DNA of 64,000 nt from contig NW_027193546.1 in NCBI RefSeq assembly GCF_032444005.1, forward strand, positions 806,001 through 870,000, given 5' to 3'. Positions 4,139 through 19,826 of the stretch are shown here, piece after piece. Every line of letters begins with the position of its first letter. The stretch's first letter is position 1. This stretch comes from Ranitomeya imitator (Eukaryota). The notes beneath the pieces are model-generated. The model was not told where the DNA came from. It searched no databases and worked only from the letters and a program-made list of their open reading frames with translations. A program made the translations under genes and the position numbers.

Positions 4139-4900
4139 GCTGCACCTGACTGCTAGGATCTGATTTCTCTGCTTTGGTGATGTCGCTGTAATGTTAGAAC
4201 ACTCATCGGTGCCAACGTTACGCTCCGAATACTGAATAGTCCCAAGGATATCCTGACGTGGAAAGACTAAACGGCTTACCCGAAGCAGATCCCTCTACAG
4301 CTCTAATCAGGGGGGTGTTCAGGGCGGTTTCCAAATGTAGGTTAATATTCTGTCTAGACATTTAATATCCTGTTCTTATTGGGCGCTGATTAGTAGATTT
4401 ATGGGGGATATATATCCGCACTGGGCCGCAGTGATAATTTCCTGATCAGATCCGTGTACAGGGAATGTGGCTGTAGGAGGCAGCTGGATAGATGGACGCC
4501 CTGTGTGTCATCACATAGGGTACGGAGACTCCTATATGATGACCACGTCCTGGACACAAATGTTTCGGGTGGATGGCGCCTCTGAAGACTATTATAACCT
4601 CCTCAGAATAATGATGGGCTGTTTGAGGTCTGATAGCCACGGCTGCGCGTTTTGAGGTCCTGTCATGTATTTATATATATCCGGTGTGTGCAGTGTATGG
4701 GGGGACACAGGTGTTGGTTCTGTTCCCTACAGCTCCTGTCCTGTATATGTATATACAAAGCGTATACATTGTGTGCAGTGTATGGGGGACACAGCGCTGC
4801 CGGGGCCTGGGGTGAAGGTGCCGCATCTGTGGATACTCTGGTAAAGAAAAGATCAGCTGGAAAACGGCACGTAAGGAGTTAAACGGGAGAGGAAAGACGT

Positions 4901-5374
4901 GCAACAAAATTAATAAAGGGGATGGGAGAACTACAATACCCAGATAGATTAGCGAAATTAGGATTATTTAGTCTAGAAAAAAGACGACTGAGGGGCGATC
5001 TAATAACCATGTATAAGTATATAAGGGGACAATACAAATATCTCGCTGAGGATCTGTTTATACCAAGGAAGGTGACGGGCACAAGGGGGCATTCTTTGCG
5101 TCTGGAGGAGAGAAGGTTTTTCCACCAACATAGAAGAGGATTCTTTACTGTTAGGGCAGTGAGAATCTGGAATTGCTTGCCTGAGGAGGTGGTGATGGCG
5201 AACTCAGTCGAGGGGTTCAAGAGAGGCCTGGATGTCTTCCTGGAGCAGAACAATATTGTATCATACAATTAGGTTCTGTAGAGGGACGTAGATCTGGGGA
5301 TTTGTTGTGATGGAGTGTGGGCTGAACTGGAAGGACAAATGTCTTTTTTCGGCCTTACTAACTATGTTACTATG
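4901..5374 (+). mobile_element. 5'-truncated CR1 LINE copy (ORF2 C-terminus, 3' UTR, TTACTATG tail)
   Basis: 4901-5270 is identical to the reverse complement of 7496-7865; ends in TTACTAACTATGTTACTATG. Confidence 0.96.
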
Positions 5375-5744
5375 TACATCACTGAAGGCTGAGCGTTACC
5401 AAGGTTTCTCGCTCATTGTCTGATCACAGAATCCGTTGGGGAATTTGAATTCCCCGCTCATAATCTCCGGAGGATTGTTACAGGTCACTGATAGCGACAA
5501 CCATCCCCCACCCCCTTACTGCGGGACCTGCTAACTACATGTAGACCTCACCGCGGAGTATCAGACACTAAGGAGGGGACATTTCCTGCGAGCTTGGCAG
5601 ACGACACTCCACCTGAGGGTCTGAGACTTCATGTGGGATTGACCCATTCATCTCCTGTTATTCTGTGGATATGTGCACCAACAATGGCGGCAATGGTGTA
5701 TGAACTATCAGCCTCATGCGAGGACCCCCGAGATAGGCGGCGCC

Positions 5745-5813: not shown

Positions 5814-6206
5814 TCACTTGCTCTTGCTCGCCTTGCTGCTCTCGGTCTTCTTGGGCAGCAGCACGGCCTGGATGTTGGGCAGGACGCCCCCCTGGGCAAT
5901 GGTCACCCCACCCAGCAGCCTGTTCAGCTCCTCGTCATTGCGCACCGCCAGCTGCAGGTGACGGGGGATGATGCGGGTCTTCTTGTTGTCCCGGGCAGCA
6001 TTGCCGGCCAATTCCAGGATCTCAGCGGTCAGATACTCCAGCACAGCGGCCAGATAGACCGGAGCGCCGGCGCCGACTCTCTCAGCGTAGTTGCCCTTGC
6101 GGAGAAGCCTGTGCACACGGCCGACTGGGAACTGCAGTCCTGCCCGGGATGAGCGGGTCTTGGCCTTAGCACGGACCTTTCCTCCTTGTTTGCCGCGTCC
6201 AGACAT
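5814..6206 (-). CDS. H2A: Histone H2A (canonical, 130 aa)
   Basis: [40 protein letters not shown]...[15 protein letters not shown]; stem-loop 29 nt after the stop. Confidence 0.99.
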
Positions 6207-7383
6207 GATGCCGATAACTAATGACGGAAAATCGTGTAGAGAAGAGTCTGTGCTATGTCGCCTTATATAGTCCGTTGCTCCGCCCTCCTCTCCTGTCGTT
6301 GGACGGATCTGAAGATGAAAATGGAGAAGAGTATTGGAGATCCACCAATGAGCTACAGAGGGCAGAGCTTATTATTGCTCCTTTCTCAAATGAGTTTCTC
6401 ACCCAATAGAAAACGTTCGCTTTGGACAGAATAGATAAGGGGTGAAAACAGATATCTGTCCTGGAGCAGAAGGAAATGCAGAAATATTCTGTTGACTTGT
6501 TGTACTTGTGTCTTCTATCAGCCATATATTGCACTGACAGTCTGGCGGGTGAGGGGTTAATTCCTGTCAGGAGGCGGCTCCTCACTCACCCGCTTATTAT
6601 CCTGTGCAGATCCCCTGTGGTGTCCGCGCTTATACTATCACAGCCTGACTGAGACAAGTCTCCTATGTTCTGCCCGGAGCCTGATGTGACGCTGCCGGGT
6701 CTCGGGTGGGGGAAGTCGCCGCTTCTGTAAAGCGAGTGTGTAGTGGGGGGTCAGCACACACGGACACTGAGGAGTTAAATGGAGGCGGATATTCCTGTAT
6801 CTGGGATTGGTCGGCGCCTGCGGATGTCTCTCGCTCATTGGCTGATTACAGATCCGTTGCTGGTTTTGAATTCCCCGCTCAGTTTCTGCTCTTTGTCCGT
6901 CGGGTTTATTACCGGCCCCTTTGCTGGAGCGGCGATCGCTGATAATAGTGTGCGGTATTTTTTCTTCTACTATTAACTTGACCACACGGTCTGTTTTACC
7001 AGCACCTCCGTGTCCTTGACCTGAGTGCACACCATTATCCTTGTTCATGCCCCCAAACACGGGCGGGGATCGGTCGCCATTATTACTCTGGGGAGGTTAT
7101 AATAACCTTCATAGGCGCCATCCATCCGAAACATTAGTGTCCGGGACGTGGTCATCACATAGGAGTCTCCGTACCCGGTACACAGGGCGTCCATCTATCC
7201 AGCTGCCTCAGACAGCCACATTCCCTGTGAATATTCGCTGCCCTATTCACCCCACACGGATCTGATCAGGAGAATATTACTGTACAGCCCATTTCCCTGT
7301 AATTCCGTGTTCTATTTATTTTATATATCAATAAGAAGAAACCGCATTTGTGCTGTGATGGGAGTCACCAGTACTTGGGGCAT
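6053..7383. repeat. Left copy of the 1,331-bp direct duplication flanking the full-length CR1
   Basis: Matches 12102-13432 (offset 6,049); I found one mismatch (6364 A vs 12413 G). Confidence 0.96.
6263..6407 (-). promoter_or_regulatory. H2A promoter (TATA plus CCAAT boxes)
   Basis: Minus-strand CTATATAA at 6263-6270; CCAAT/ATTGG at 6333-6337, 6345-6349 and 6403-6407. Confidence 0.75.
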
Positions 7384-7490
7384 AGTAACATAGTAACATA
7401 GTTAGTAAGGCCGAAAAAAGACATTTGTCCATCCAGTTCAGCCTATATTCCATCATAATAAATACCCAGATCTACGTCCTTCTACAGAAC

Positions 7491-10271
7491 CTAATAATTG
7501 TATGATACAATATTGTTCTGCTCCAGGAAGACATCCAGGCCTCTCTTGAACCCCTCGACTGAGTTCGCCATCACCACCTCCTCAGGCAAGCAATTCCAGA
7601 TTCTCACTGCCCTAACAGTAAAGAATCCTCTTCTATGTTGGTGGAAAAACCTTCTCTCCTCCAGACGCAAAGAATGCCCCCTTGTGCCCGTCACCTTCCT
7701 TGGTATAAACAGATCCTCAGCGAGATATTTGTATTGTCCCCTTATATACTTATACATGGTTATTAGATCGCCCCTCAGTCGTCTTTTTTCTAGACTAAAT
7801 AATCCTAATTTCGCTAATCTATCTGGGTATTGTAGTTCTCCCATCCCCTTTATTAATTTTGTTGCCCTCCTTTGTACTCTCTCTAGTTCCATTATATCCT
7901 TCCTGAGCACCGGTGCCCAAAACTGGACACAGTACTCCATGTGCGGTCTAACTAGGGATTTGTACAGAGGCAGTAGAATGCTCTCATCATGTGTATCCAG
8001 ACCTCTTTTAATGCACCCCATGATCCTGTTTGCCTTGGCAGCTGCTGCCTGGCACTGGCTGCTCCAGGTAAGTTTATCATTAACTAGGATCCCCAAGTCC
8101 TTCTCCCTGTCAGATTTACCCAGTGGTTTCCCGTTCAGTGTGTAATGGTGATATTGATTCCCTCTTCCCATGTGTATAACCTTACATTTATCATTGTTAA
8201 ACCTCATCTGCCACCTTTCAGCCCAAGTTTCCAACTTATCCAGATCCATCTGTAGCAGAATACTATCTTCTCTTGTATTAACTGCTTTACATAGTTTTGT
8301 ATCATCTGCAAATATCGATATTTTACTGTGTAAACCTTCTACCAGATCATTAATGAATATGTTGAAGAGAACAGGTCCCAATACTGACCCCTGCGGTACC
8401 CCACTGGTCACAGCGACCCAGTTAGAGACTATACCATTTATAACCACCCTCTGCTTTCTATCACTAAGCCAGTTACTAACCCATTTACACACATTTTCCC
8501 CCAGACCAAGCATTCTCATTTTGTGTACCAACCTCTTGTGCGGCACGGTATCAAACGCTTTGGAAAAATCGAGATATACCACGTCCAATGACTCACCGTG
8601 GTCCAGTCTATAGCTTACCTCTTCATAAAAACTGATTAGATTGGTTTGACAGGAGCGATTTCTCATAAACCCATGCTGATATGGAGTTAAACAGTTATTC
8701 TCATTGAGATAATCCAGAATAACATCCCTCAGAAACCCTTCAAATATTTTACCAACAATAGAGGTTAGACTTACTGGCCTATAATTTCCAGGTTCACTTT
8801 TAGAGCCCTTTTTGAATATTGGCACCACATTTGCTATGCGCCAGTCCTGCGGAACAGACCCTGTCGCTATAGAGTCACTAAAAATAAGAAATAATGGTTT
8901 ATCTATTACATTACTTAGTTCTCTTAGTACTCGTGGGTGTATGCCATCCGGACCCGGAGATTTATCTATTTTAATCTTATTTAGCCGGTTTCGCACCTCT
9001 TCTTGGGTTAGATTGGTGACCCTTAATATAGGGTTTTCATTGTTTCTTGGGATTTCACCTAGCATTTCATTTTCCACCGTGAATACCGTGGAGAAGAAGG
9101 TGTTTAATATGTTAGCTTTTTCCTCGTCATCTACAACCATTCTTTCCTCACTATTTTTTAAGGGGCCTACATTTTCAGTTTTTATTCTTTTACTATTGAT
9201 ATAGTTGAAGAACAGTTTGGGATTAGTTTTACTCTCCTTAGCAATGTGCTTCTCTGTTTCCTTTTTGGCAGCTTTAATTAGTTTTTTAGATAAAGTATTT
9301 TTCTCCCTATAGTTTTGTAGAGCTTCAATGGTGCCATCCTGCTTTAGTAGTGCAAATGCTTTCTTTTTACTGTTAATTGCCTGTCTTACTTCTTTGTTTA
9401 GCCACATTGGGTTTTTCCTATTTCTAGTCCTTTTATTCCCACAAGGTATAAACCGCTTACACTGCCTATTTAGGATGTTCTTAAACATTTCCCATTTATT
9501 ATCTGTATTCTCATTTCTGAGGATATTGTCCCAGTCTACCAGATTAAGGGCATCTCTAAGCTGTTCAAACTTTGCCTTCCTAAAGTTCAATGTTTTTGTG
9601 ACTCCCTGACAAGTCCCCCTAGTGAAAGACAGGTGAAACTGCACAATATTGTGGTCGCTATTTCCTAAATGCCCAACCACCTGCAGATTTGTTATTCTGT
9701 CAGGTCTATTAGATAGTATTAGGTCTAAAAGTGCTGCTCCTCTGGTTGGATTCTGCACCAATTGTGAAAGATAATTTTTCTTGGTTATTAGCAGAAACCT
9801 GTTGCCTTTATGGGTTTCACAGGTTTCTGTTTCCCAGTTAATATCCGGGTAGTTAAAGTCCCCCATAACCAGGACCTCATTATGAGTTGCAGCTTCATCT
9901 ATCTGCTTTAGAAGTAGACTTTCCATGCTTTCTGTTATATTTGGGGGTTTGTAACAGACCCCAATGAGAATTTTGTTACCATTTTTCCCTCCATGAATTT
10001 CAACCCATATGGACTCGACATCCTCATTCCCTTCGCTAATATCCTCCCTTAAAGTGGACTTTAGACAAGACTTTACATAGAGACAAACCCCTCCTCCTCT
10101 CCGATTTTTACGATCCTTTCTAAACAGACTGTAACCCTGTAAGTTAACTGCCCAGTCATAGCTTTCATCTAACCATGTCTCGGTTATTCCCACTATGTCA
10201 AAGTTACCTGTAGATATTTCTGCTTCTAGTTCTTCCATCTTGTTTGTCAGGCTTCTGGCGTTTGCGAGCAT
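7491..10271 (-). CDS. CR1 ORF2: AP-endonuclease plus reverse transcriptase (926 aa from the first Met; frame is open further upstream)
   Basis: NARSL, GITETW, GDFNYP and SDHN endonuclease motifs; PGPDG, YRPVSLTS, QHGF, YLDFSKAFD, GVPQGSVLGP and FADD RT motifs; no stops. Confidence 0.97.
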   Translation of the reverse strand: MLANARSLTNKMEELEAEISTGNFDIVGITETWLDESYDWAVNLQGYSLFRKDRKNRRGGGVCLYVKSCLKSTLREDISEGNEDVESIWVEIHGGKNGNKILIGVCYKPPNITESMESLLLKQIDEAATHNEVLVMGDFNYPDINWETETCETHKGNRFLLITKKNYLSQLVQNPTRGAALLDLILSNRPDRITNLQVVGHLGNSDHNIVQFHLSFTRGTCQGVTKTLNFRKAKFEQLRDALNLVDWDNILRNENTDNKWEMFKNILNRQCKRFIPCGNKRTRNRKNPMWLNKEVRQAINSKKKAFALLKQDGTIEALQNYREKNTLSKKLIKAAKKETEKHIAKESKTNPKLFFNYINSKRIKTENVGPLKNSEERMVVDDEEKANILNTFFSTVFTVENEMLGEIPRNNENPILRVTNLTQEEVRNRLNKIKIDKSPGPDGIHPRVLRELSNVIDKPLFLIFSDSIATGSVPQDWRIANVVPIFKKGSKSEPGNYRPVSLTSIVGKIFEGFLRDVILDYLNENNCLTPYQHGFMRNRSCQTNLISFYEEVSYRLDHGESLDVVYLDFSKAFDTVPHKRLVHKMRMLGLGENVCKWVSNWLSDRKQRVVINGIVSNWVAVTSGVPQGSVLGPVLFNIFINDLVEGLHSKISIFADDTKLCKAVNTREDSILLQMDLDKLETWAERWQMRFNNDKCKVIHMGRGNQYHHYTLNGKPLGKSDREKDLGILVNDKLTWSSQCQAAAAKANRIMGCIKRGLDTHDESILLPLYKSLVRPHMEYCVQFWAPVLRKDIMELERVQRRATKLIKGMGELQYPDRLAKLGLFSLEKRRLRGDLITMYKYIRGQYKYLAEDLFIPRKVTGTRGHSLRLEERRFFHQHRRGFFTVRAVRIWNCLPEEVVMANSVEGFKRGLDVFLEQNNIVSYNY

Positions 10272-10408
10272 GCAGTTTAGAGGATTTTGTTTTGTTCCAA
10301 TCTCCTCACTGTGGATTGTTTTAGAAATGTTCTTACCTCCCTTCTGAGTATGTTTTCCTGGGTCGTCTTTGTTCGAGTCTAATGTTTTTCTTCCCGTCCC
10401 CTCTTCTT

Positions 10409-11362
10409 CTAGTTTAACGCCCTCCTGATGAGTGTAGCGAGTCTTCTGGCGAATGTGTGTTTCCCAGGTTTGTTGAGGTGTAGTCCGTCTCTGGCAAGGA
10501 GTCCATCATACCAGTAATTCACACCGTGGTCCAGGAATCCAAATCCTTGTTGTCTGCACCATCGTCTTAGCCAGTTGTTTGCATCAAGGATCCTGTTCCA
10601 TCTCCTGGTGCCATGCCCGTCTACTGGAAGGATAGAAGAAAAAACTACCTGTGCATCCAGTTCCTTTACTTTCTTCCCCAACTCTTCAAAGTCCTTGCAG
10701 ATTGTCGGTAGGTCCTTCCTTGCCGTGTCATTGGTGCCAACATGTATCAGAAGAAATGGGTGGACGTCCTTGGAGCTGAAGAGCTTTGGTATCCTATCGG
10801 TCACATCCTTGATCATCGCACCTGGAAGGCAGCATACTTCTCTTGCAGTTATGTCCGGTCTGCAGATGGCTGCTTCGGTGCCTCTCAGTAGTGAGTCTCC
10901 CACCACCACCACTCTTCGTTGCTTCTTGGCTGTACTTTTTGCTGTCACTTGTTGCTGTGTGCCCTTTTCTTTTTTGCTTGCTGGTATTGCTTCATTCTTA
11001 GGTGTGCCATCTTCATCCTCTACAAAGATTTGATATCGGTTCTTCAGTTGTGTGGTTGGTGATTTCTCCATGGTCTTCTTGCTTCTTTTGGTCACATGCT
11101 TCCACTCATCTGCTTTTGGAGGTTCTCTGACACTTTTTGCACCTTCTGTGACCAGTAGAGATGCTTCTGTTCTGTCTAGAAAGTCTTCATTCTCTTTGAT
11201 GAGTTTCAAAGTTGCTATTCTTTCTTCCAGACCCCGCACCTTTTCTTCTAAAAGGGCCACTAGTCTACACTTCTGACAGGTGAAATTGGATTCTTCTTCT
11301 GGTCGATCTGTGAACATGTAGCACATGCTGCAGCTCACCATGTAGGTTGTCACATCTGCCAT
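10409..11362 (-). CDS. CR1 ORF1: CxxC..CxxC zinc finger, coiled coil, SGNH/GDSL esterase (317 aa)
   Basis: CSMC...CQKC; SGNH blocks VGDSLLRG, LPGA, HVGTND and DGLH are intact. Confidence 0.93.
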   Translation of the reverse strand: MADVTTYMVSCSMCYMFTDRPEEESNFTCQKCRLVALLEEKVRGLEERIATLKLIKENEDFLDRTEASLLVTEGAKSVREPPKADEWKHVTKRSKKTMEKSPTTQLKNRYQIFVEDEDGTPKNEAIPASKKEKGTQQQVTAKSTAKKQRRVVVVGDSLLRGTEAAICRPDITAREVCCLPGAMIKDVTDRIPKLFSSKDVHPFLLIHVGTNDTARKDLPTICKDFEELGKKVKELDAQVVFSSILPVDGHGTRRWNRILDANNWLRRWCRQQGFGFLDHGVNYWYDGLLARDGLHLNKPGKHTFARRLATLIRRALN

Positions 11363-11463
11363 GTTGCTCCTAGATCCTGCTGACTTGCTGTGTGTTTTCC
11401 TTCTTGTGTAATCTACTCAGCCAAGCTCTCTTGCAATAATGTCCTACAGGCAAAAATTCGCGC

Positions 11464-12097
11464 GGTTTGGTGATGCTTTCGAAGCAGCTGGTCCCGGCTG
11501 TACCCAACGATCTTCTAGCTTAGGGAGACTTCGCTTCTCCCAGAAGGCACCTGGAATATGCAAATTAGCCTCCTGAAGCTTGAATCCCTGGTTTGGTGAT
11601 GCTTTCGAAGCAGCTGGTCCCGGCTGTACCCAACGATCTTCTAGCTTAGGGAGACTTCGCTTCTCCCAGAAGGCACCTGGAATATTCAAATTAGCCTCCT
11701 GAAGCTTGAATCCCTGGTTTGGTGATGCTTTCGAAGCAGCTGGTCCCGGCTGTACCCAACGATCTTCTAGCTTAGGGAGACTTCGCTTCTCCCAGAAGGC
11801 ACCTGGAATATGCAAATTAGCCTCCTGAAGCTTGAATCCCTGGTTTGGTGATGCTTTCGAAGCAGCTGGTCCCGGCTGTACCCAACGATCTTCTAGCTTA
11901 GGGAGACTTCGCTTCTCCCAGAAGGCACCTGGAATATGCAAATTAGCCTCCTGAAGCTTGAATCCCTGGTTTGGTGATGCTTTCGAAGCAGCTGGTCCCG
12001 GCTGTACCCAACGATCTTCTAGCTTAGGGAGACTTCGCTTCTCCCAGAAGGCACCTGGAATATGCAAATTAGCCTCCTGAAGCTTGAATCCCTGGTT
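11464..12097 (-). repeat. Five 126-bp tandem monomers forming the CR1 5' UTR
   Basis: Units start at 11464, 11590, 11716, 11842 and 11968 (4-nt stub at 12094); one substitution seen, in unit 2. Confidence 0.96.
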
Positions 12098-12255
12098 CAA
12101 GGATAGACCGGAGCGCCGGCGCCGACTCTCTCAGCGTAGTTGCCCTTGCGGAGAAGCCTGTGCACACGGCCGACTGGGAACTGCAGTCCTGCCCGGGATG
12201 AGCGGGTCTTGGCCTTAGCACGGACCTTTCCTCCTTGTTTGCCGCGTCCAGACAT
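12097..12255 (-). pseudogene. H2A: Truncated H2A (51 H2A codons plus Pro, then TGA) fused to the CR1 5' end
   Basis: MSGRGKQ...GAGAPVYP*; identical to the H2A 5' end as far as 12102, with the stop codon supplied by the junction. Confidence 0.93.
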
Positions 12256-13432
12256 GATGCCGATAACTAATGACGGAAAATCGTGTAGAGAAGAGTCTGT
12301 GCTATGTCGCCTTATATAGTCCGTTGCTCCGCCCTCCTCTCCTGTCGTTGGACGGATCTGAAGATGAAAATGGAGAAGAGTATTGGAGATCCACCAATGA
12401 GCTACAGAGGGCGGAGCTTATTATTGCTCCTTTCTCAAATGAGTTTCTCACCCAATAGAAAACGTTCGCTTTGGACAGAATAGATAAGGGGTGAAAACAG
12501 ATATCTGTCCTGGAGCAGAAGGAAATGCAGAAATATTCTGTTGACTTGTTGTACTTGTGTCTTCTATCAGCCATATATTGCACTGACAGTCTGGCGGGTG
12601 AGGGGTTAATTCCTGTCAGGAGGCGGCTCCTCACTCACCCGCTTATTATCCTGTGCAGATCCCCTGTGGTGTCCGCGCTTATACTATCACAGCCTGACTG
12701 AGACAAGTCTCCTATGTTCTGCCCGGAGCCTGATGTGACGCTGCCGGGTCTCGGGTGGGGGAAGTCGCCGCTTCTGTAAAGCGAGTGTGTAGTGGGGGGT
12801 CAGCACACACGGACACTGAGGAGTTAAATGGAGGCGGATATTCCTGTATCTGGGATTGGTCGGCGCCTGCGGATGTCTCTCGCTCATTGGCTGATTACAG
12901 ATCCGTTGCTGGTTTTGAATTCCCCGCTCAGTTTCTGCTCTTTGTCCGTCGGGTTTATTACCGGCCCCTTTGCTGGAGCGGCGATCGCTGATAATAGTGT
13001 GCGGTATTTTTTCTTCTACTATTAACTTGACCACACGGTCTGTTTTACCAGCACCTCCGTGTCCTTGACCTGAGTGCACACCATTATCCTTGTTCATGCC
13101 CCCAAACACGGGCGGGGATCGGTCGCCATTATTACTCTGGGGAGGTTATAATAACCTTCATAGGCGCCATCCATCCGAAACATTAGTGTCCGGGACGTGG
13201 TCATCACATAGGAGTCTCCGTACCCGGTACACAGGGCGTCCATCTATCCAGCTGCCTCAGACAGCCACATTCCCTGTGAATATTCGCTGCCCTATTCACC
13301 CCACACGGATCTGATCAGGAGAATATTACTGTACAGCCCATTTCCCTGTAATTCCGTGTTCTATTTATTTTATATATCAATAAGAAGAAACCGCATTTGT
13401 GCTGTGATGGGAGTCACCAGTACTTGGGGCAT
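12102..13432. repeat. Right copy of the 1,331-bp direct duplication (H2A 5' end, promoter and upstream spacer)
   Basis: Matches 6053-7383. Confidence 0.96.
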
Positions 13433-13599
13433 CTTACAGTCAGACTTGTGATCGGATCTCTCTGCACTGCAGTGGTTTTATCTCACGTCATATTAACCCT
13501 ATGAGATCTATGGCATTCGTTTTACATTATTACATCTAGTGCTAGAGGATCCTATCCTGCAATTGTATTGGGATATTTCTCCCATGATTCGTTGTTCCC

Positions 13600-14543
13600 C
13601 TCCACATTCTCGGAACTTCTACATGTGGGCAAAACAGAATTCATTGTCTTTCCCACATCACACGCAACCCCCCAACGAACCTATCCATTACAGGAAACGG
13701 CTGCCCACTCTCCTCAGTCCAAGTTCGCTGCCTCGGGGTAATCCTTGACACTCATCTCTCCTTCAAACCTCATATCCAAGCCCTTTCCACTTCCTGCCGC
13801 CTTCAACTCAAAATATTTCAAGGATCTATAGATTTCTAAACCAAGAATCTGCAAAAACCCTAGTCTATGCCCTCATCATCTCCCGCCTGGACTACTGTAA
13901 CCTCCTGCTCTGTGGCCTCCCCTCTAACACTCTCGCACCCCTCCTATCTATTCTAAACTCTCCTGCCCGACTAACCAACCTGTCCCCCGCTATTCCCCGG
14001 CCTCTCCCCTCTGTCAATCCCTTCACTGGCTCCCCATTACCCAGAGACTCCAGTACAAAAGCCTAACCATGACATACAAAGCCATCCACAAAATGTCTCC
14101 TTTATACATCTGTGACCTCCTCTCCCGGTACTTTCCTGCAACCTCCGATCCTCACAAGATCTCCTTCTCTACTCCCCTCTTATCTCCTCTTCCCACAATC
14201 GCATACAAGATTTATCTTGCGCATCACCCCTACTCTGGAACCCTCTACCACAACACATCAGACTCTCACCTACCATGGAAACCTTCAAAAAGAGCCTAAA
14301 GACCCACCTCTTCCGACAAGCCTACAACCTGCAGTAACCACCACTGATCGACCAGCTCTACCTTCACCTACTGTATCCTCATCCATCCATTGTAGATTGC
14401 GAGCCCTCGTGGGCAGGGTCCTCTCTCCTCCTGTACCAGTTATGACTTGTATTGTTCAAGATCATTGTACCTGTTATTATGTATACACCTCCTCACATGT
14501 AAAGCGCCATGGAATAAATGGCGCTATAATAATAAATAATAAT
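13600..14543 (+). mobile_element. Degenerate 5'-truncated L2/CR1-group LINE (RT C-terminal region plus 3' UTR)
   Basis: Broken frames read KTEFIVFP..VRCLGVILD..LSFKPHI..ALIISRLDYCNLLLCGLP..LHWLPITQR. Ends in the hairpin AGCGCCAT-ggaataa-ATGGCGCT (14503-14525) plus (AAT)n. The 5' boundary is approximate. Confidence 0.85.
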
Positions 14544-15548
14544 ATTGCCCGAGAGCCGCCAGTCCTGACACTAGATGAAGCGGGGGAAGAAAAGTGATAG
14601 AACAGAAGGACGATCAGTAACTGAGCAGGGATCCTGTGAGGAGGATGTGACGGCCGATAATGTAACTGCCTGACCTGTGAGATCCTGACACCACAGGGTA
14701 ATGTTCTGAGCAGGGACACTCCGCAATCTTCTACACATGATCCTACATTTCCCATCACAGACCTCCTGCCTGCAGCCGTAGGACTGATCTGTAATGGGGA
14801 GACATGGTGGGATCTGCTGGGAAGGGCAGAATTGGTCTTCCCTGAAATGTCTCTTGTAGGATATGTCCCTGACCAGTATATCGTCTCCACAATACGGATT
14901 GTGACGGGAAAGGGACGATCTGATCGTCTCCAGGTCAGACACACGGGAACATCACAGCATGTGGAGAACACGAATCATTCTCTATATCCATGAGAGGAAA
15001 CCGGAGCGGATACAGCGCCGCTAACCTGGAAATCTGCAGATTCCTGTGTGGGATGTAAGAGACCAATGATCGCTCAACACAAGCAGATTTCCCGATATCG
15101 GTCCTGGGACCAGGTGTTATATGAAGACAAAAGACGGAAAAAAGCGGGAACCGTAAACGTGTTACCATTGGAAACATTAGCTCCTCCCTCTGCTGATTGG
15201 CTGAACACAGGACGGTTGGGGGTTTGAATTTCCCGCCGCTTCTAAATGTAATGACGTCACTTACACTGTAAAAAGAATCCAGATTAGGCTCTAGATCAAC
15301 TCCACCACAAATGGCTCCTGTTACCTGAGAAATGAGAGTAATGAACTAATAAACGAGACCCCAGAATGCCGAGATCTGTGCAGCAAGGAGTTAAATAAGA
15401 AGTCCCTGAATACACATCAACTCGCTGAGCAATGCCCAGATTATTCCTGAGATTTTCTCACCATCTCCCTCGTCACCAGGCGCAGAGCCCCGGGCGGAGC
15501 GAGCAGACACCTCGGGAAGACGGGAGAGGACACCGGAGCAGTGTGGGT

Positions 15549-15588
15549 GGCTCTTGTAGTGAGGGTGTGGGTGGCTCTTAGAAGAGCC
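15549..15588 (-). terminator. Histone 3' stem-loop plus HDE of H2B
   Basis: Minus strand GGCTCT TCTA AGAGCC ACCCAC (15573-15588); second AAGAGCC at 15549-15555. Confidence 0.93.
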
Positions 15589-15618
15589 TTTGGGGTGAGG
15601 AGCGGAGCACGGANNNNN

Positions 15619-16017
<399 letters not shown>

Positions 16018-16910: not shown

Positions 16911-18412
16911 GCCATTATCTGTCCCAATCACTGCACAAAGTCCTCCTTCAATAAGGGCTAATTTCCAGCTATCTGCAGATTATTCCGAGGCTGAGTTCTG
17001 CGAGCGACACTCAATTTGCACTGACAGTCTGGCGGGTGAGGGGTCAATCCCTGTCAGTGTTTCTCCTCCGCTCCATCTGCACAGGAGGCGGCTCTTCACT
17101 CACCCGCGTATTATCCTGTGCAGATCCCCTGTGGTGTCCGCGCTGATCCTATCACAGCCTGACTGAGACAAGTCTCCTATGTTCTGCCCGGAGCCTGATG
17201 TGACGCTGCCGGGTCTCGGGTGGGGGAAGTCGCCGCTTCTATAAAGCGAGTGAGTAGTGGGGGTCAGCACACAAGGACACTAAGGAGTTAATGGGGGCGG
17301 ATGTTCCTGTATCTGGGATTGGTCGGCGCCTGTGGATGTCTCTCGCTCATTGGCTGATTACAGATCCGTTGCTGGTTTTGAATTTCCCGCTCAATCGCTT
17401 TTCTTTGTCCGTCGGATTATTACCGGCCCCTCTGCTGGAGCGGCGATCGCTGTGTATACCGGTGGGAGCAGCTCTACCCCGCTGATAATACCGGGTCCTG
17501 TCCTCCCAGCTGTCTGCCCCCGAACACGGGGATCAGTCGCCATTATTATTCTGAGGAGGTTATAATAGTCTTCAGAGGCGACATCCATCCGACACATTAG
17601 TGTCCAGGACTTGGTCATCACACAGGAGCCTCCGTACCCGGTACACAGGGCGTCCATCTATCCAGCTGCCTCTTACAGCCACATTCCCTGTACACGGATC
17701 TGATCAGGAAATTATCACTGCGGCCCAGTGCGGATATATATCCCCCATGAATCCATGTTATCTTTGTAGGTCAATGAGAAGAAACCGCATCACCCGAAGT
17801 CCGCGGTGAAAGACGGGGGAGCAGACACGGCCCCAGTATGTCAGGACCCGGGAGCATACAACTAGCACGTCCCAGGCTGAGGCCGGTACTACAGGCAGCC
17901 GCACAGGGGATATTTTGCCCTGCAGAGACGCTGAGCCGGATACTAATCAATCAGCGCCCAATAAGAACAGGATCTTAAATGTCTAGACAGAATATTAACC
18001 TACATTTGGAAACCGCCCGGAACACCCCCTGATTAGAGCTGTAGAGAGATCTGCTTCCAATAAGCCTTTCCACGTCAGGATATCCTTCGGAAACTGAATG
18101 TGTGGGAATATGGTTAAAGAGACCCTACTCCCAGATCATACACACACGGAATCCGTCGGGTACAAAACAGGATTTGCAAATAGGTCTCACAACCAAAAGC
18201 AGCGACAGAACCATCCGCCCAAAAACGGCATCAGAGGACGTTACCGAACTGCGGATCAGGGTCAGAATTACCATTCCCCACAATTATTTGGCCGATGGTA
18301 GTTTTCGACTATTCAGTATTCGGAGCGTAAATTCGGCACCGATGAGTGTTCTACTAACATTACAGCGACATCACCACAGCAGAGAAATGAGATCCTAGCA
18401 GTCAGGTGCAGC

Positions 18413-19311: not shown

Positions 19312-19826
19312 GTAACATAGTAACATAGTTAGTAAGGCCGAAAAAATACATTTGTCCTTCCAGTTCAGCCTATATTCCATCATAATAAATCCCCAGATCT
19401 ACGTCCTTCTACAGAACCTAATAATTGTATGATACAATATTGTTCTGCTCCAGGAAGACATCCAGGCCTCTCTTGAACCCCTCGACTGAGTTCGCCATCA
19501 CCACCTCCTCAGGCAAGCAATTCCAGATTCTCACTGCCCTAACAGTAAAGAATCCTCTTCTATGTTGGTGGAAAAACCTTCTCTCTTCCAGACGCAAAGA
19601 ATGCCCCCTTGTGCCCGTCACCTTCCTTGGTATAAACAGATCCTCAGCGAGATATTTGTATTGTCCCCTTATATACTTATACATGGTTATTAGATCGCCC
19701 CGTCTTTTTTCTAGACTAAATAATCCTAATTTCGCTAACCTATCTGGGTATTGTAGTTCTCCCATTCCCTTTATTAATTTTGTTGGCCTCCTTTGTACTC
19801 TCTCTAGTTCCATTATATCCTTCCTG
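19312..19826 (-). mobile_element. Third, 5'-truncated CR1 copy
   Basis: Same ORF2 C-terminus, 3' UTR and tail as the full-length element, with a 6-nt deletion (EKRRG vs EKRRLRG) and a few substitutions. Confidence 0.95.

What the first reader, a model, noticed from the sequence alone, without database searches (positions are those of the whole stretch)
6053..13432. Full-length CR1 flanked by a 1,331-bp target-site-like duplication
The geometry is A - CR1 - A, where A (6053-7383 = 12102-13432) shows one mismatch. The 3' junction uses a 3-nt CAT microhomology between target and tail. The 5' junction has 4 extra nt (CAAG, 12098-12101) that complete a 6-bp hairpin, CTTGAA..TTCAAG, suggesting snap-back synthesis. 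CR1 insertions normally have short or no TSDs. The options are a giant staggered-nick TSD, or recombination between two CR1 copies inserted 1.3 kb apart in sister histone units.
Basis: partly seen in the sequence, partly recalled or inferred. Interest (0 to 1): 0.75.

Follow-up and report, generated by a model that had tools for sequence, protein, structure and literature searches.

The report
CR1 insertion with 1.3-kb target duplication
An intact CR1-type jumping gene in a poison-frog histone cluster is flanked by two almost identical 1,331-base copies of its landing site, most likely a rare "long target-site duplication" of a kind already seen for related elements in cell culture.

Summary
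Window 6053-7383 and 12102-13432 are 1,331-bp direct repeats (A) that differ at one CpG site. They abut both ends of one intact 4,718-bp CR1-group LINE on the minus strand. The 3-nt CAT overlap at the tail junction and the 4 extra nt (CAAG) at the 5' junction are also real.

The left repeat boundary lies in codon 52 of histone H2A. Copy 1 of A therefore completes an intact H2A gene. Copy 2 carries the H2A promoter and 51 codons, pointing into the CR1.

Best reading (about 0.6): one retrotransposition event whose second DNA break fell 1.3 kb from the first. This is a long target-site duplication. It is not a new kind. Zebrafish ZfL2-2 (CR1-2_DR) gave a 1,228-bp one in 1 of 25 insertions in DT40 cells, and human L1 and Chlamydomonas Dualen also give kb-scale ones.

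Main rival (about 0.15): unequal crossover between two CR1 insertions 1.3 kb apart. It is disfavoured because the two A copies are about ten times closer to each other than to other A-type sequence in public runs.

Misassembly could not be tested, because only short contigs were served.

The scan noted the same A-CR1-A geometry about 127 kb further on in this genome (s1-295474). I could not read that copy.

The parts
5814..6206 (-). Intact histone H2A gene (130 aa). The X|A boundary (6052/6053) falls inside codon 52, so repeat copy 1 supplies its first 51 codons and its promoter.
   Evidence: ORF list; Pfam Histone and Histone_H2A_C
6053..7383 (.). Repeat A, copy 1 (1,331 bp): H2A codons 1-51 plus 1,177 bp upstream of the start codon.
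   Evidence: Offset comparison and BLAST, 1 mismatch in 1,331
6364..6364 (.). The only difference between the two A copies: A here, G at 12413 (CpA vs CpG).
7381..7383 (.). CAT microhomology shared by the target end and the CR1 tail unit. This is the first-strand (priming) nick site on the + strand.
   Evidence: Copy 2 of A also ends in CAT before the right flank.
7384..7410 (-). CR1 3' tail, (TTACTATG)n on the element strand, with no poly-A. The same tail, with a different unit count, ends the two truncated copies at 5375 and 19312.
7491..10271 (-). CR1 ORF2, 926 aa, uninterrupted: APE-type endonuclease and reverse transcriptase.
   Evidence: PF03372 5e-16, PF00078 4e-34
10409..11362 (-). CR1 ORF1, 317 aa, uninterrupted, with a GDSL-esterase domain.
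   Evidence: PF13472 3e-9
11464..12097 (-). 5' end of the CR1: 5.0 tandem 126-bp monomers, with 0-1 differences between units.
12098..12101 (.). Four extra nucleotides (CAAG on +, CTTG on the element strand) at the 5' junction. They fit snap-back copying of CTTG at 12084-12087.
12102..13432 (.). Repeat A, copy 2 (1,331 bp).
12102..12255 (-). Truncated H2A (51 codons, then P and a stop). With its promoter upstream, it is oriented to transcribe into the CR1.
   Evidence: translation
13433..13628 (.). Right flank Y. The A|Y junction is present in public contigs of the best-holding sample.
   Evidence: table 8 (X1 record 4: 13331-13494; X2 record 20: 13331-13690)

Best explanation
One retrotransposition event of a young, intact CR1-group LINE produced a long target-site duplication (L-TSD).

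Inferred steps:
1. The element's endonuclease nicked the window + strand after ...GGGGCAT (7383 / 13432).
2. The CAT 3' end paired with the (UUACUAUG)n RNA tail and primed reverse transcription of the whole RNA, up to a monomer of the 5' array.
3. Four extra nucleotides were added at the cDNA end.
4. The opposite strand was not broken a few bases away. It was broken, or the cDNA end was joined, 1,331 bp away, inside the H2A coding sequence.
5. Fill-in or replication of the 1.3-kb stagger then duplicated segment A on both sides of the insert.

Shown: the geometry, the intact element and both junction features. Inferred: the single-event origin and the position of the second break.

Consequences: H2A stays intact although the 5' junction lies inside it. 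A second H2A promoter with 51 codons now points into the CR1. The two 1.3-kb repeats could recombine and delete the insert cleanly. By an earlier scan note, not verified here, the whole structure was later copied along with a histone repeat of about 127 kb.
For: - The repeats stop exactly at the two ends of one LINE copy: tail on one side, 5' monomer plus 4 nt on the other.
- X|A is ancestral continuity, because it reads through an intact H2A ORF.
- The junctions have the features reported for CR1/L2-group insertions. About 80% of zebrafish genomic ZfL2-2 copies have 3' microhomology and about 40% have 5' extra nucleotides.
- Direct precedent: 1 of 25 de novo ZfL2-2 (= CR1-2_DR) inserts in wild-type DT40 cells had a 1,228-bp TSD (PMC2666801). 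L1 TSDs reach 1.6 kb in NER-complemented (XPD+) cells and 5.3 kb in NER-deficient cells (PMC5223499). Dualen LINEs give a median of 900 bp (PMC9977147).
- The two A copies differ only at one CpG. The high-identity contigs of sample S1 differ from both copies at 12304, 12624, 12680, 12683, 13192 and other sites, about 1% over roughly 550 nt. The two copies are therefore each other's closest relatives.
- The element looks young: both ORFs are intact and the monomers are 99-100% alike.
Against: - No molecule spanning the 7.4 kb was seen.
- No contig over the 5' junction (12101/12102) or the tail junction was among the pieces listed.
- An empty allele has no diagnostic short word, so it could not be shown.
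- Solo insertions at either junction could not be searched.
- Gene conversion between repeats 6 kb apart could also keep them identical.
- The two other CR1 copies in the window show no long TSD, so the event would be exceptional for the family.
Confidence: 0.6

Rival explanations
1. Two independent CR1 insertions in the same orientation sat in two copies or alleles of the histone unit. One was full length at X|A, inside H2A. The other lay at A|Y. Unequal crossover within the shared CR1 sequence then produced X-A-CR1-A-Y, plus a reciprocal X-CR1-Y product.
For: - This model gives exactly the same junctions, so the sequence alone cannot exclude it.
- The cluster is rich in this CR1 family: three copies in 22 kb.
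- Units or alleles of this region do differ by TE insertions. A 913-bp insert at 13629-14541 has an empty-site contig in the same sample (table 5).
- Histone arrays are known to undergo unequal exchange (general knowledge).
Against: - It needs two insertions within 1.3 kb in the same orientation, one of them full length and destroying an H2A gene, followed by a misaligned exchange.
- The A copies differ at 1 of 1,331 sites, while other A-type contigs differ from both by about 1% and the paralog in the window by 11-12%. Under exchange between diverged units about 13 differences would be expected.
- The scan's notes list only two H2A|CR1 junctions in this genome. Both have the full A-CR1-A geometry. 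This is a weak point, because the notes are unchecked.
Confidence: 0.15
2. Assembly artefact. The assembler passed through a high-copy CR1 and joined two different histone units or haplotypes. On this reading the duplication of A does not exist on any one molecule.
For: - The CR1 family is very abundant and its copies are 97-99% alike.
- The histone unit is multi-copy.
- No spanning read or contig could be obtained, and the contigs are only 100-400 nt long.
- In sample S1, A-internal contigs (depth 143-159) are only 1.1-1.3 times as deep as the A|Y junction contig (126.5). This ratio does not by itself require a duplicated A.
Against: - The structure is only 7.4 kb, which is shorter than ordinary long reads.
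- Both junctions carry textbook insertion features.
- A second locus about 127 kb away is noted with the same geometry (s1-295474; not verified by me).
- A chimeric join would still need real A|CR1-tail and CR1-5'|A junctions somewhere in the genome. That reduces this rival to the two-insertion situation.
Confidence: 0.1
3. The event was coupled to replication or repair, with no second endonuclease cut. The cDNA 3' end invaded the same duplex or the sister chromatid 1.3 kb upstream, using little or no homology. DNA synthesis then re-copied A up to the original nick. This is a variant of the single-event model, with a different way of making the duplication.
For: - L1-linked small tandem duplications, attributed to processing or replication of the broken ends, are reported in experimental L1 systems (PMC11702581).
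- PMC5223499 proposes pre-existing distant nicks or DNA ends as second-strand primers.
- The 4 extra nt show that the cDNA end was processed before joining.
Against: Nothing in the sequence separates this from a distant second nick. There is no microhomology at the 5' junction beyond the extra nucleotides.
Confidence: 0.1

Closest known systems
Long TSD (L-TSD, 1,228 bp) of zebrafish ZfL2-2 / CR1-2_DR in chicken DT40 cells (Suzuki et al. 2009, PMC2666801)
   Same: It is a CR1/L2-group LINE with an esterase ORF1 lineage and a microsatellite-type tail. It shows 3' microhomology, 5' extra nucleotides and a TSD of almost the same size.
   Different: That case was a de novo event from a marked construct in cultured cells. 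This one is a natural, germline-transmitted, full-length copy in a frog histone cluster, reportedly since copied again.
Extremely large L1 TSDs in human cells (Servant et al. 2017, PMC5223499; Gilbert 2002/2005 and Symer 2002 as cited there)
   Same: The direct duplication of target DNA abuts both ends of a LINE insert. Sizes run from 100 bp to 5.3 kb. The proposed cause is a distant second nick. The paper notes that such repeats can duplicate exons and can later recombine.
   Different: L1 is a different clade with a poly-A tail, and the frequency is high only in NER-deficient cells. No DNA-repair defect is implied here.
Dualen-4b LINE duplications in Chlamydomonas mutation-accumulation lines (PMC9977147)
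   Same: TSD-like duplications with a median of 900 bp flank new LINE insertions and were observed as they arose.
   Different: Dualen has two endonucleases (RLE + APE), and long TSDs are its rule rather than an exception. It is an algal element.
R9 LINEs of rotifers (126-bp TSD; Gladyshev and Arkhipova 2009, cited in PMC9977147)
   Same: It is a natural LINE family with an unusually long TSD.
   Different: It is site-specific, has a fixed length of 126 bp, and is ten times shorter.
L1-mediated tandem duplications in cancer and experimental L1 expression (PMC11702581)
   Same: A LINE insert sits at the junction of a tandem duplication.
   Different: Those events are somatic, often tens of kb to Mb, and usually involve truncated inserts.

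Membership tests
CR1-group LINE (CR1/L2 superfamilies) | ORF2 with an APE-type endonuclease followed by a reverse transcriptase | tested here: met
   Pfam PF03372 / PF14529 and PF00078 on the 926-aa ORF
CR1-group LINE (CR1/L2 superfamilies) | Esterase-type ORF1, the only ORF1 type found in vertebrate CR1 and L2 (PMC13343379) | tested here: met
   PF13472 GDSL-like, 3.4e-9, on the 317-aa ORF; literature
CR1-group LINE (CR1/L2 superfamilies) | 3' end without poly-A, ending in short tandem repeats | tested here: met
   (TTACTATG)n tail in all three copies in the window, with varying unit number
CR1-group LINE (CR1/L2 superfamilies) | RT groups with the CR1 superfamily, rather than L2 or Rex1, in a phylogeny | not tested
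   No tree was built. Amphibian L2s mostly lack ORF1, which favours CR1 proper.
LINE long target-site duplication (single TPRT event) | Direct repeats of target DNA end exactly at the 3' tail and at the 5' end of one insert | tested here: met
LINE long target-site duplication (single TPRT event) | The repeats are identical at birth, so closer to each other than to any other copy of that sequence | tested here: met
   1 CpG difference in 1,331 bp, against about 1% to other A-type contigs and 11-12% to the window paralog
LINE long target-site duplication (single TPRT event) | A pre-insertion allele exists with one copy of the repeat and no insert | tested here: inconclusive
   X|A is continuous through an intact H2A and A|Y contigs exist. 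Both junctions also occur in the filled form, and contigs of 100-400 nt cannot link them.
LINE long target-site duplication (single TPRT event) | No solo insertion exists at only one of the two junctions | not testable with these tools
   The rest of the genome cannot be read. The one read-laying run did not include X, and it listed only the best-supported loose ends.
LINE long target-site duplication (single TPRT event) | The structure is present on single DNA molecules | not testable with these tools
   All 18 runs are served as Logan contigs.
NAHR product of two displaced CR1 insertions | Parental solo insertions or the reciprocal X-CR1-Y deletion exist in other units or haplotypes | not testable with these tools
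   The scan notes mention only A-CR1-A forms. That is a weak negative.

The most novel reading that the evidence does not exclude
The long duplication did more than mark an odd insertion. It copied a complete S-phase H2A promoter in front of an intact CR1 while leaving H2A intact, so creating a histone-promoter-driven source element. That element was then amplified with the histone array and may feed the very high CR1 activity of this genome. It would also show that kb-scale TSDs arise and become fixed in a wild vertebrate germline.
Probability: 0.1. Interest if true: 0.6.

Novelty: new member of a known kind. Interest (0 to 1): 0.35.

Why it matters
Kb-scale target duplications by LINEs are documented mostly in cultured or repair-deficient cells and in an alga. 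A clean natural example in a vertebrate germline, for a CR1-group element, would show three things:
- such events survive in the germline;
- they can duplicate promoters and exons, here an H2A promoter and 51 codons;
- they can let a LINE land inside a gene without destroying it.

The two long repeats also give a built-in route for exact loss of the insert by recombination. This matters for the assumption that LINE insertions are never precisely lost, on which their use as homoplasy-free markers rests. The mechanism itself is not new.

Tried and rejected
**Steps that led nowhere**
- Exact-protein look-ups of ORF1 and ORF2, meant to fetch other assemblies or the second locus: nothing is on record.
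- The one read-laying run (11960-14900, four runs) returned only 100-400-nt contigs. No listed piece crosses 12101/12102. Depth sums many paralogs, so copy-number reasoning is only suggestive.
- I tried to confirm A|Y continuity from paralogs inside the window. The right-hand paralog (17016-17790) follows A only up to 13396, 36 bp short of the junction. The inverted left paralog stops earlier.
- I compared the nick sites of the three CR1 copies for a common cleavage motif. The result is too weak to use.

**Models rejected**
- 5' or 3' transduction of A by a read-through CR1 RNA. The insert would have to land exactly at the boundary of the same 1,331-bp segment.
- Insertion into a pre-existing A-A tandem duplication. 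This needs the same coincidence.
- Template switch onto H2A mRNA. A runs 1,177 bp upstream of the H2A start codon, through the promoter.
- Simple tandem duplication of [A+CR1]. That would leave a second CR1.

**Not done**
- The large protein searches were not used, because the family scans already settled the proteins.
- The N run at 15614-15898 was left untouched.

Full report
**Observation**

With an offset of 6,049 bp, window 6053-7383 and 12102-13432 are identical except for one base (6364 A, 12413 G). Identity ends abruptly on both sides. The single difference is CpA versus CpG, a hypermutable site.

The 4,718 bp between the repeats are one complete LINE on the minus strand:
- a (TTACTATG)n tail at 7384-7410;
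- an uninterrupted 926-aa ORF2 with APE endonuclease and reverse transcriptase;
- an uninterrupted 317-aa ORF1 with a GDSL-esterase domain;
- five 126-bp monomers at 11464-12097 that differ at 0-1 positions.

An esterase ORF1, APE+RT and a non-poly-A repeat tail are the CR1-group layout (PMC13343379). I did not build an RT tree.

**Junctions**

*Tail side.* The target reads ...GGGGCAT and the tail continues AGTAACATAGTAA... Copy 2 of A also ends in CAT before the right flank, and the tail unit is CATAGTAA. The three bases are therefore shared by target and tail. Two 5'-truncated copies of the same family (4893-5375 on +, 19312-19826 on -, 97% identical to the main copy) end in the same tail with other unit counts. 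They have no evident TSD.

*5' side.* The monomer array stops at 12097. It is followed by CAAG, which belongs neither to the monomer nor to the target, and then by A.

The terminal TT would pair with AA at 12088-12089, and CTTG would be copied as CAAG. However, 6 of the 256 possible tetramers could be produced this way from the last 60 nt. The chance is about 2%, and the idea was chosen after seeing the sequence. I treat it as compatible, not shown.

**What is duplicated**

The left boundary (6052/6053) lies in codon 52 of an intact H2A gene (5814-6206, minus strand). A therefore holds H2A codons 1-51 plus 1,177 bp upstream of the start codon.
- Copy 1 completes the intact H2A gene.
- Copy 2 is a truncated H2A (51 codons, then P and a stop) with its promoter pointing into the CR1.

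Because A includes the promoter and a kilobase of spacer, it was not copied from H2A mRNA.

**Explanations**

Only two processes make a repeat end exactly at both ends of one LINE:
- a single insertion whose two strand breaks were 1,331 bp apart;
- an unequal crossover between two same-orientation insertions 1.3 kb apart in different copies or alleles of the unit.

Transduction models, insertion into an older A-A duplication, and plain tandem duplication each need an unlikely coincidence or predict a different product.

**Known precedents**

Kb-scale TSDs are documented.
- ZfL2-2 (CR1-2_DR), a zebrafish CR1/L2-group LINE, gave one 1,228-bp TSD among 25 de novo insertions in wild-type DT40 cells. 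About 80% of its zebrafish genomic copies have 3' microhomology and about 40% have 5' extra nucleotides (PMC2666801; PMC4245944).
- Human L1 TSDs exceed 100 bp in under 10% of HeLa events. They reach 1.6 kb in NER-complemented (XPD+) cells and 5.3 kb (median 1,495 bp) in NER-deficient cells. The authors propose a distant second nick and note that such repeats may later recombine (PMC5223499).
- Dualen LINEs in Chlamydomonas make duplications with a median of 900 bp (PMC9977147).
- Experimental L1 expression gives small tandem duplications at insertion sites (PMC11702581).

The present case matches the ZfL2-2 event in element type, junction features and size.

**Evidence from public runs**

Eighteen runs hold the stretch. 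Most hold a 0.56-0.59 share of its words, which is the CR1's share of the query. Two runs of one sample (X1 and X2, sample S1) hold 0.87-0.88. All are served as short Logan contigs, so nothing can span the structure.

Laid on 11960-14900, the runs show the following:
- Contigs of sample S1 cover the A|Y junction (X1 record 4 at 13331-13494; X2 record 20 at 13331-13690).
- A-internal contigs have depth 143-159, against 126.5 for the A|Y contig. Most A-type copies in that sample therefore continue into Y. This fits X-A-Y as the common state of the unit, with the duplicated form in a minority. The depths sum paralogs, so this is only suggestive.
- The high-identity contigs differ from both window copies at 12304, 12624, 12680, 12683, 13192 and other places, about 1% over roughly 550 nt. 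The two window copies differ from each other at one CpG. They are therefore each other's nearest relatives. A single event predicts this. A crossover between diverged sister units does not: about 13 differences would be expected.
- No listed contig crosses 12101/12102. Over 71,000 pieces and 1,200 loose ends were not shown, so this says nothing either way.

**Context from the scan's own notes (unchecked by me)**

Another note places an H2A promoter running into an intact CR1 exactly where the 5' junction of such a copy would fall (s1-295274). Both appear. If these notes are right, the whole A-CR1-A block was carried along in a duplication of the histone array of about 127 kb. That argues against a one-off misjoin, and it means the event predates that duplication. 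No note reports a solo insertion at either junction.

**Verdict**

My estimates are:

| Explanation | Probability |
|---|---|
| Single retrotransposition with a long TSD | about 0.6 |
| Replication- or repair-coupled variant of the same single event | about 0.1 |
| Unequal crossover between two insertions | about 0.15 |
| Assembly artefact | about 0.1 |

This is a new natural member of a known kind, not a new mechanism. Its interest lies in three things. It is a natural germline case for a CR1-group element. It preserves H2A while creating an H2A-promoter-CR1 fusion. It also gives the insert a built-in route for clean loss through recombination between the two repeats.

Noticed in passing
window 13629-14541: A 913-bp very high-copy repeat sits in the right flank (word depth up to 1.7 million). 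Contigs of the same sample join 13628 to 14542 with AT between them, at depth about 45 versus about 153 for the filled form. Other units or the other haplotype therefore lack this insertion.
   Followed up: partly
window 4893-5375 (+) and 7388-7873 (-): A 5'-truncated CR1 copy and the 3' end of the full-length CR1 form an inverted repeat of about 483 bp. It is 99% identical over 379 nt and 93% over the last 108 nt. The arms are 2.0 kb apart and enclose the intact H2A gene and repeat copy 1, so they are a possible substrate for inversion.
   Followed up: no
window 11444-12100 (-): The 126-bp monomer array is open in one frame (218 aa, 42 codons per unit). The frame that continues from the truncated H2A stops right after the junction (51 aa + P + stop).
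   Followed up: partly
window 12950-13150 (= 6901-7101): A short stretch inside repeat A has 20-50 times the contig depth of its surroundings. Related pieces lie at 4458-4617 (inverted) and 17515-17691. It is probably a small dispersed repeat or a conserved spacer module.
   Followed up: no
window 22272-64000: A 36-bp satellite with strong GC skew fills the remaining 42 kb or so of the window, next to the H3 gene. The scan's earlier notes derive it from a histone 3' processing signal.
   Followed up: no
window 17016-17790: A paralog of A positions 477-1295, 88-89% identical and falling to 74%, lies between H2B and H4. It shows that an older duplication of the spacer is present in the same window.
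   Followed up: partly
window 15614-15898: A run of 285 N lies inside the H2B gene (15391-15999, minus strand).
   Followed up: no
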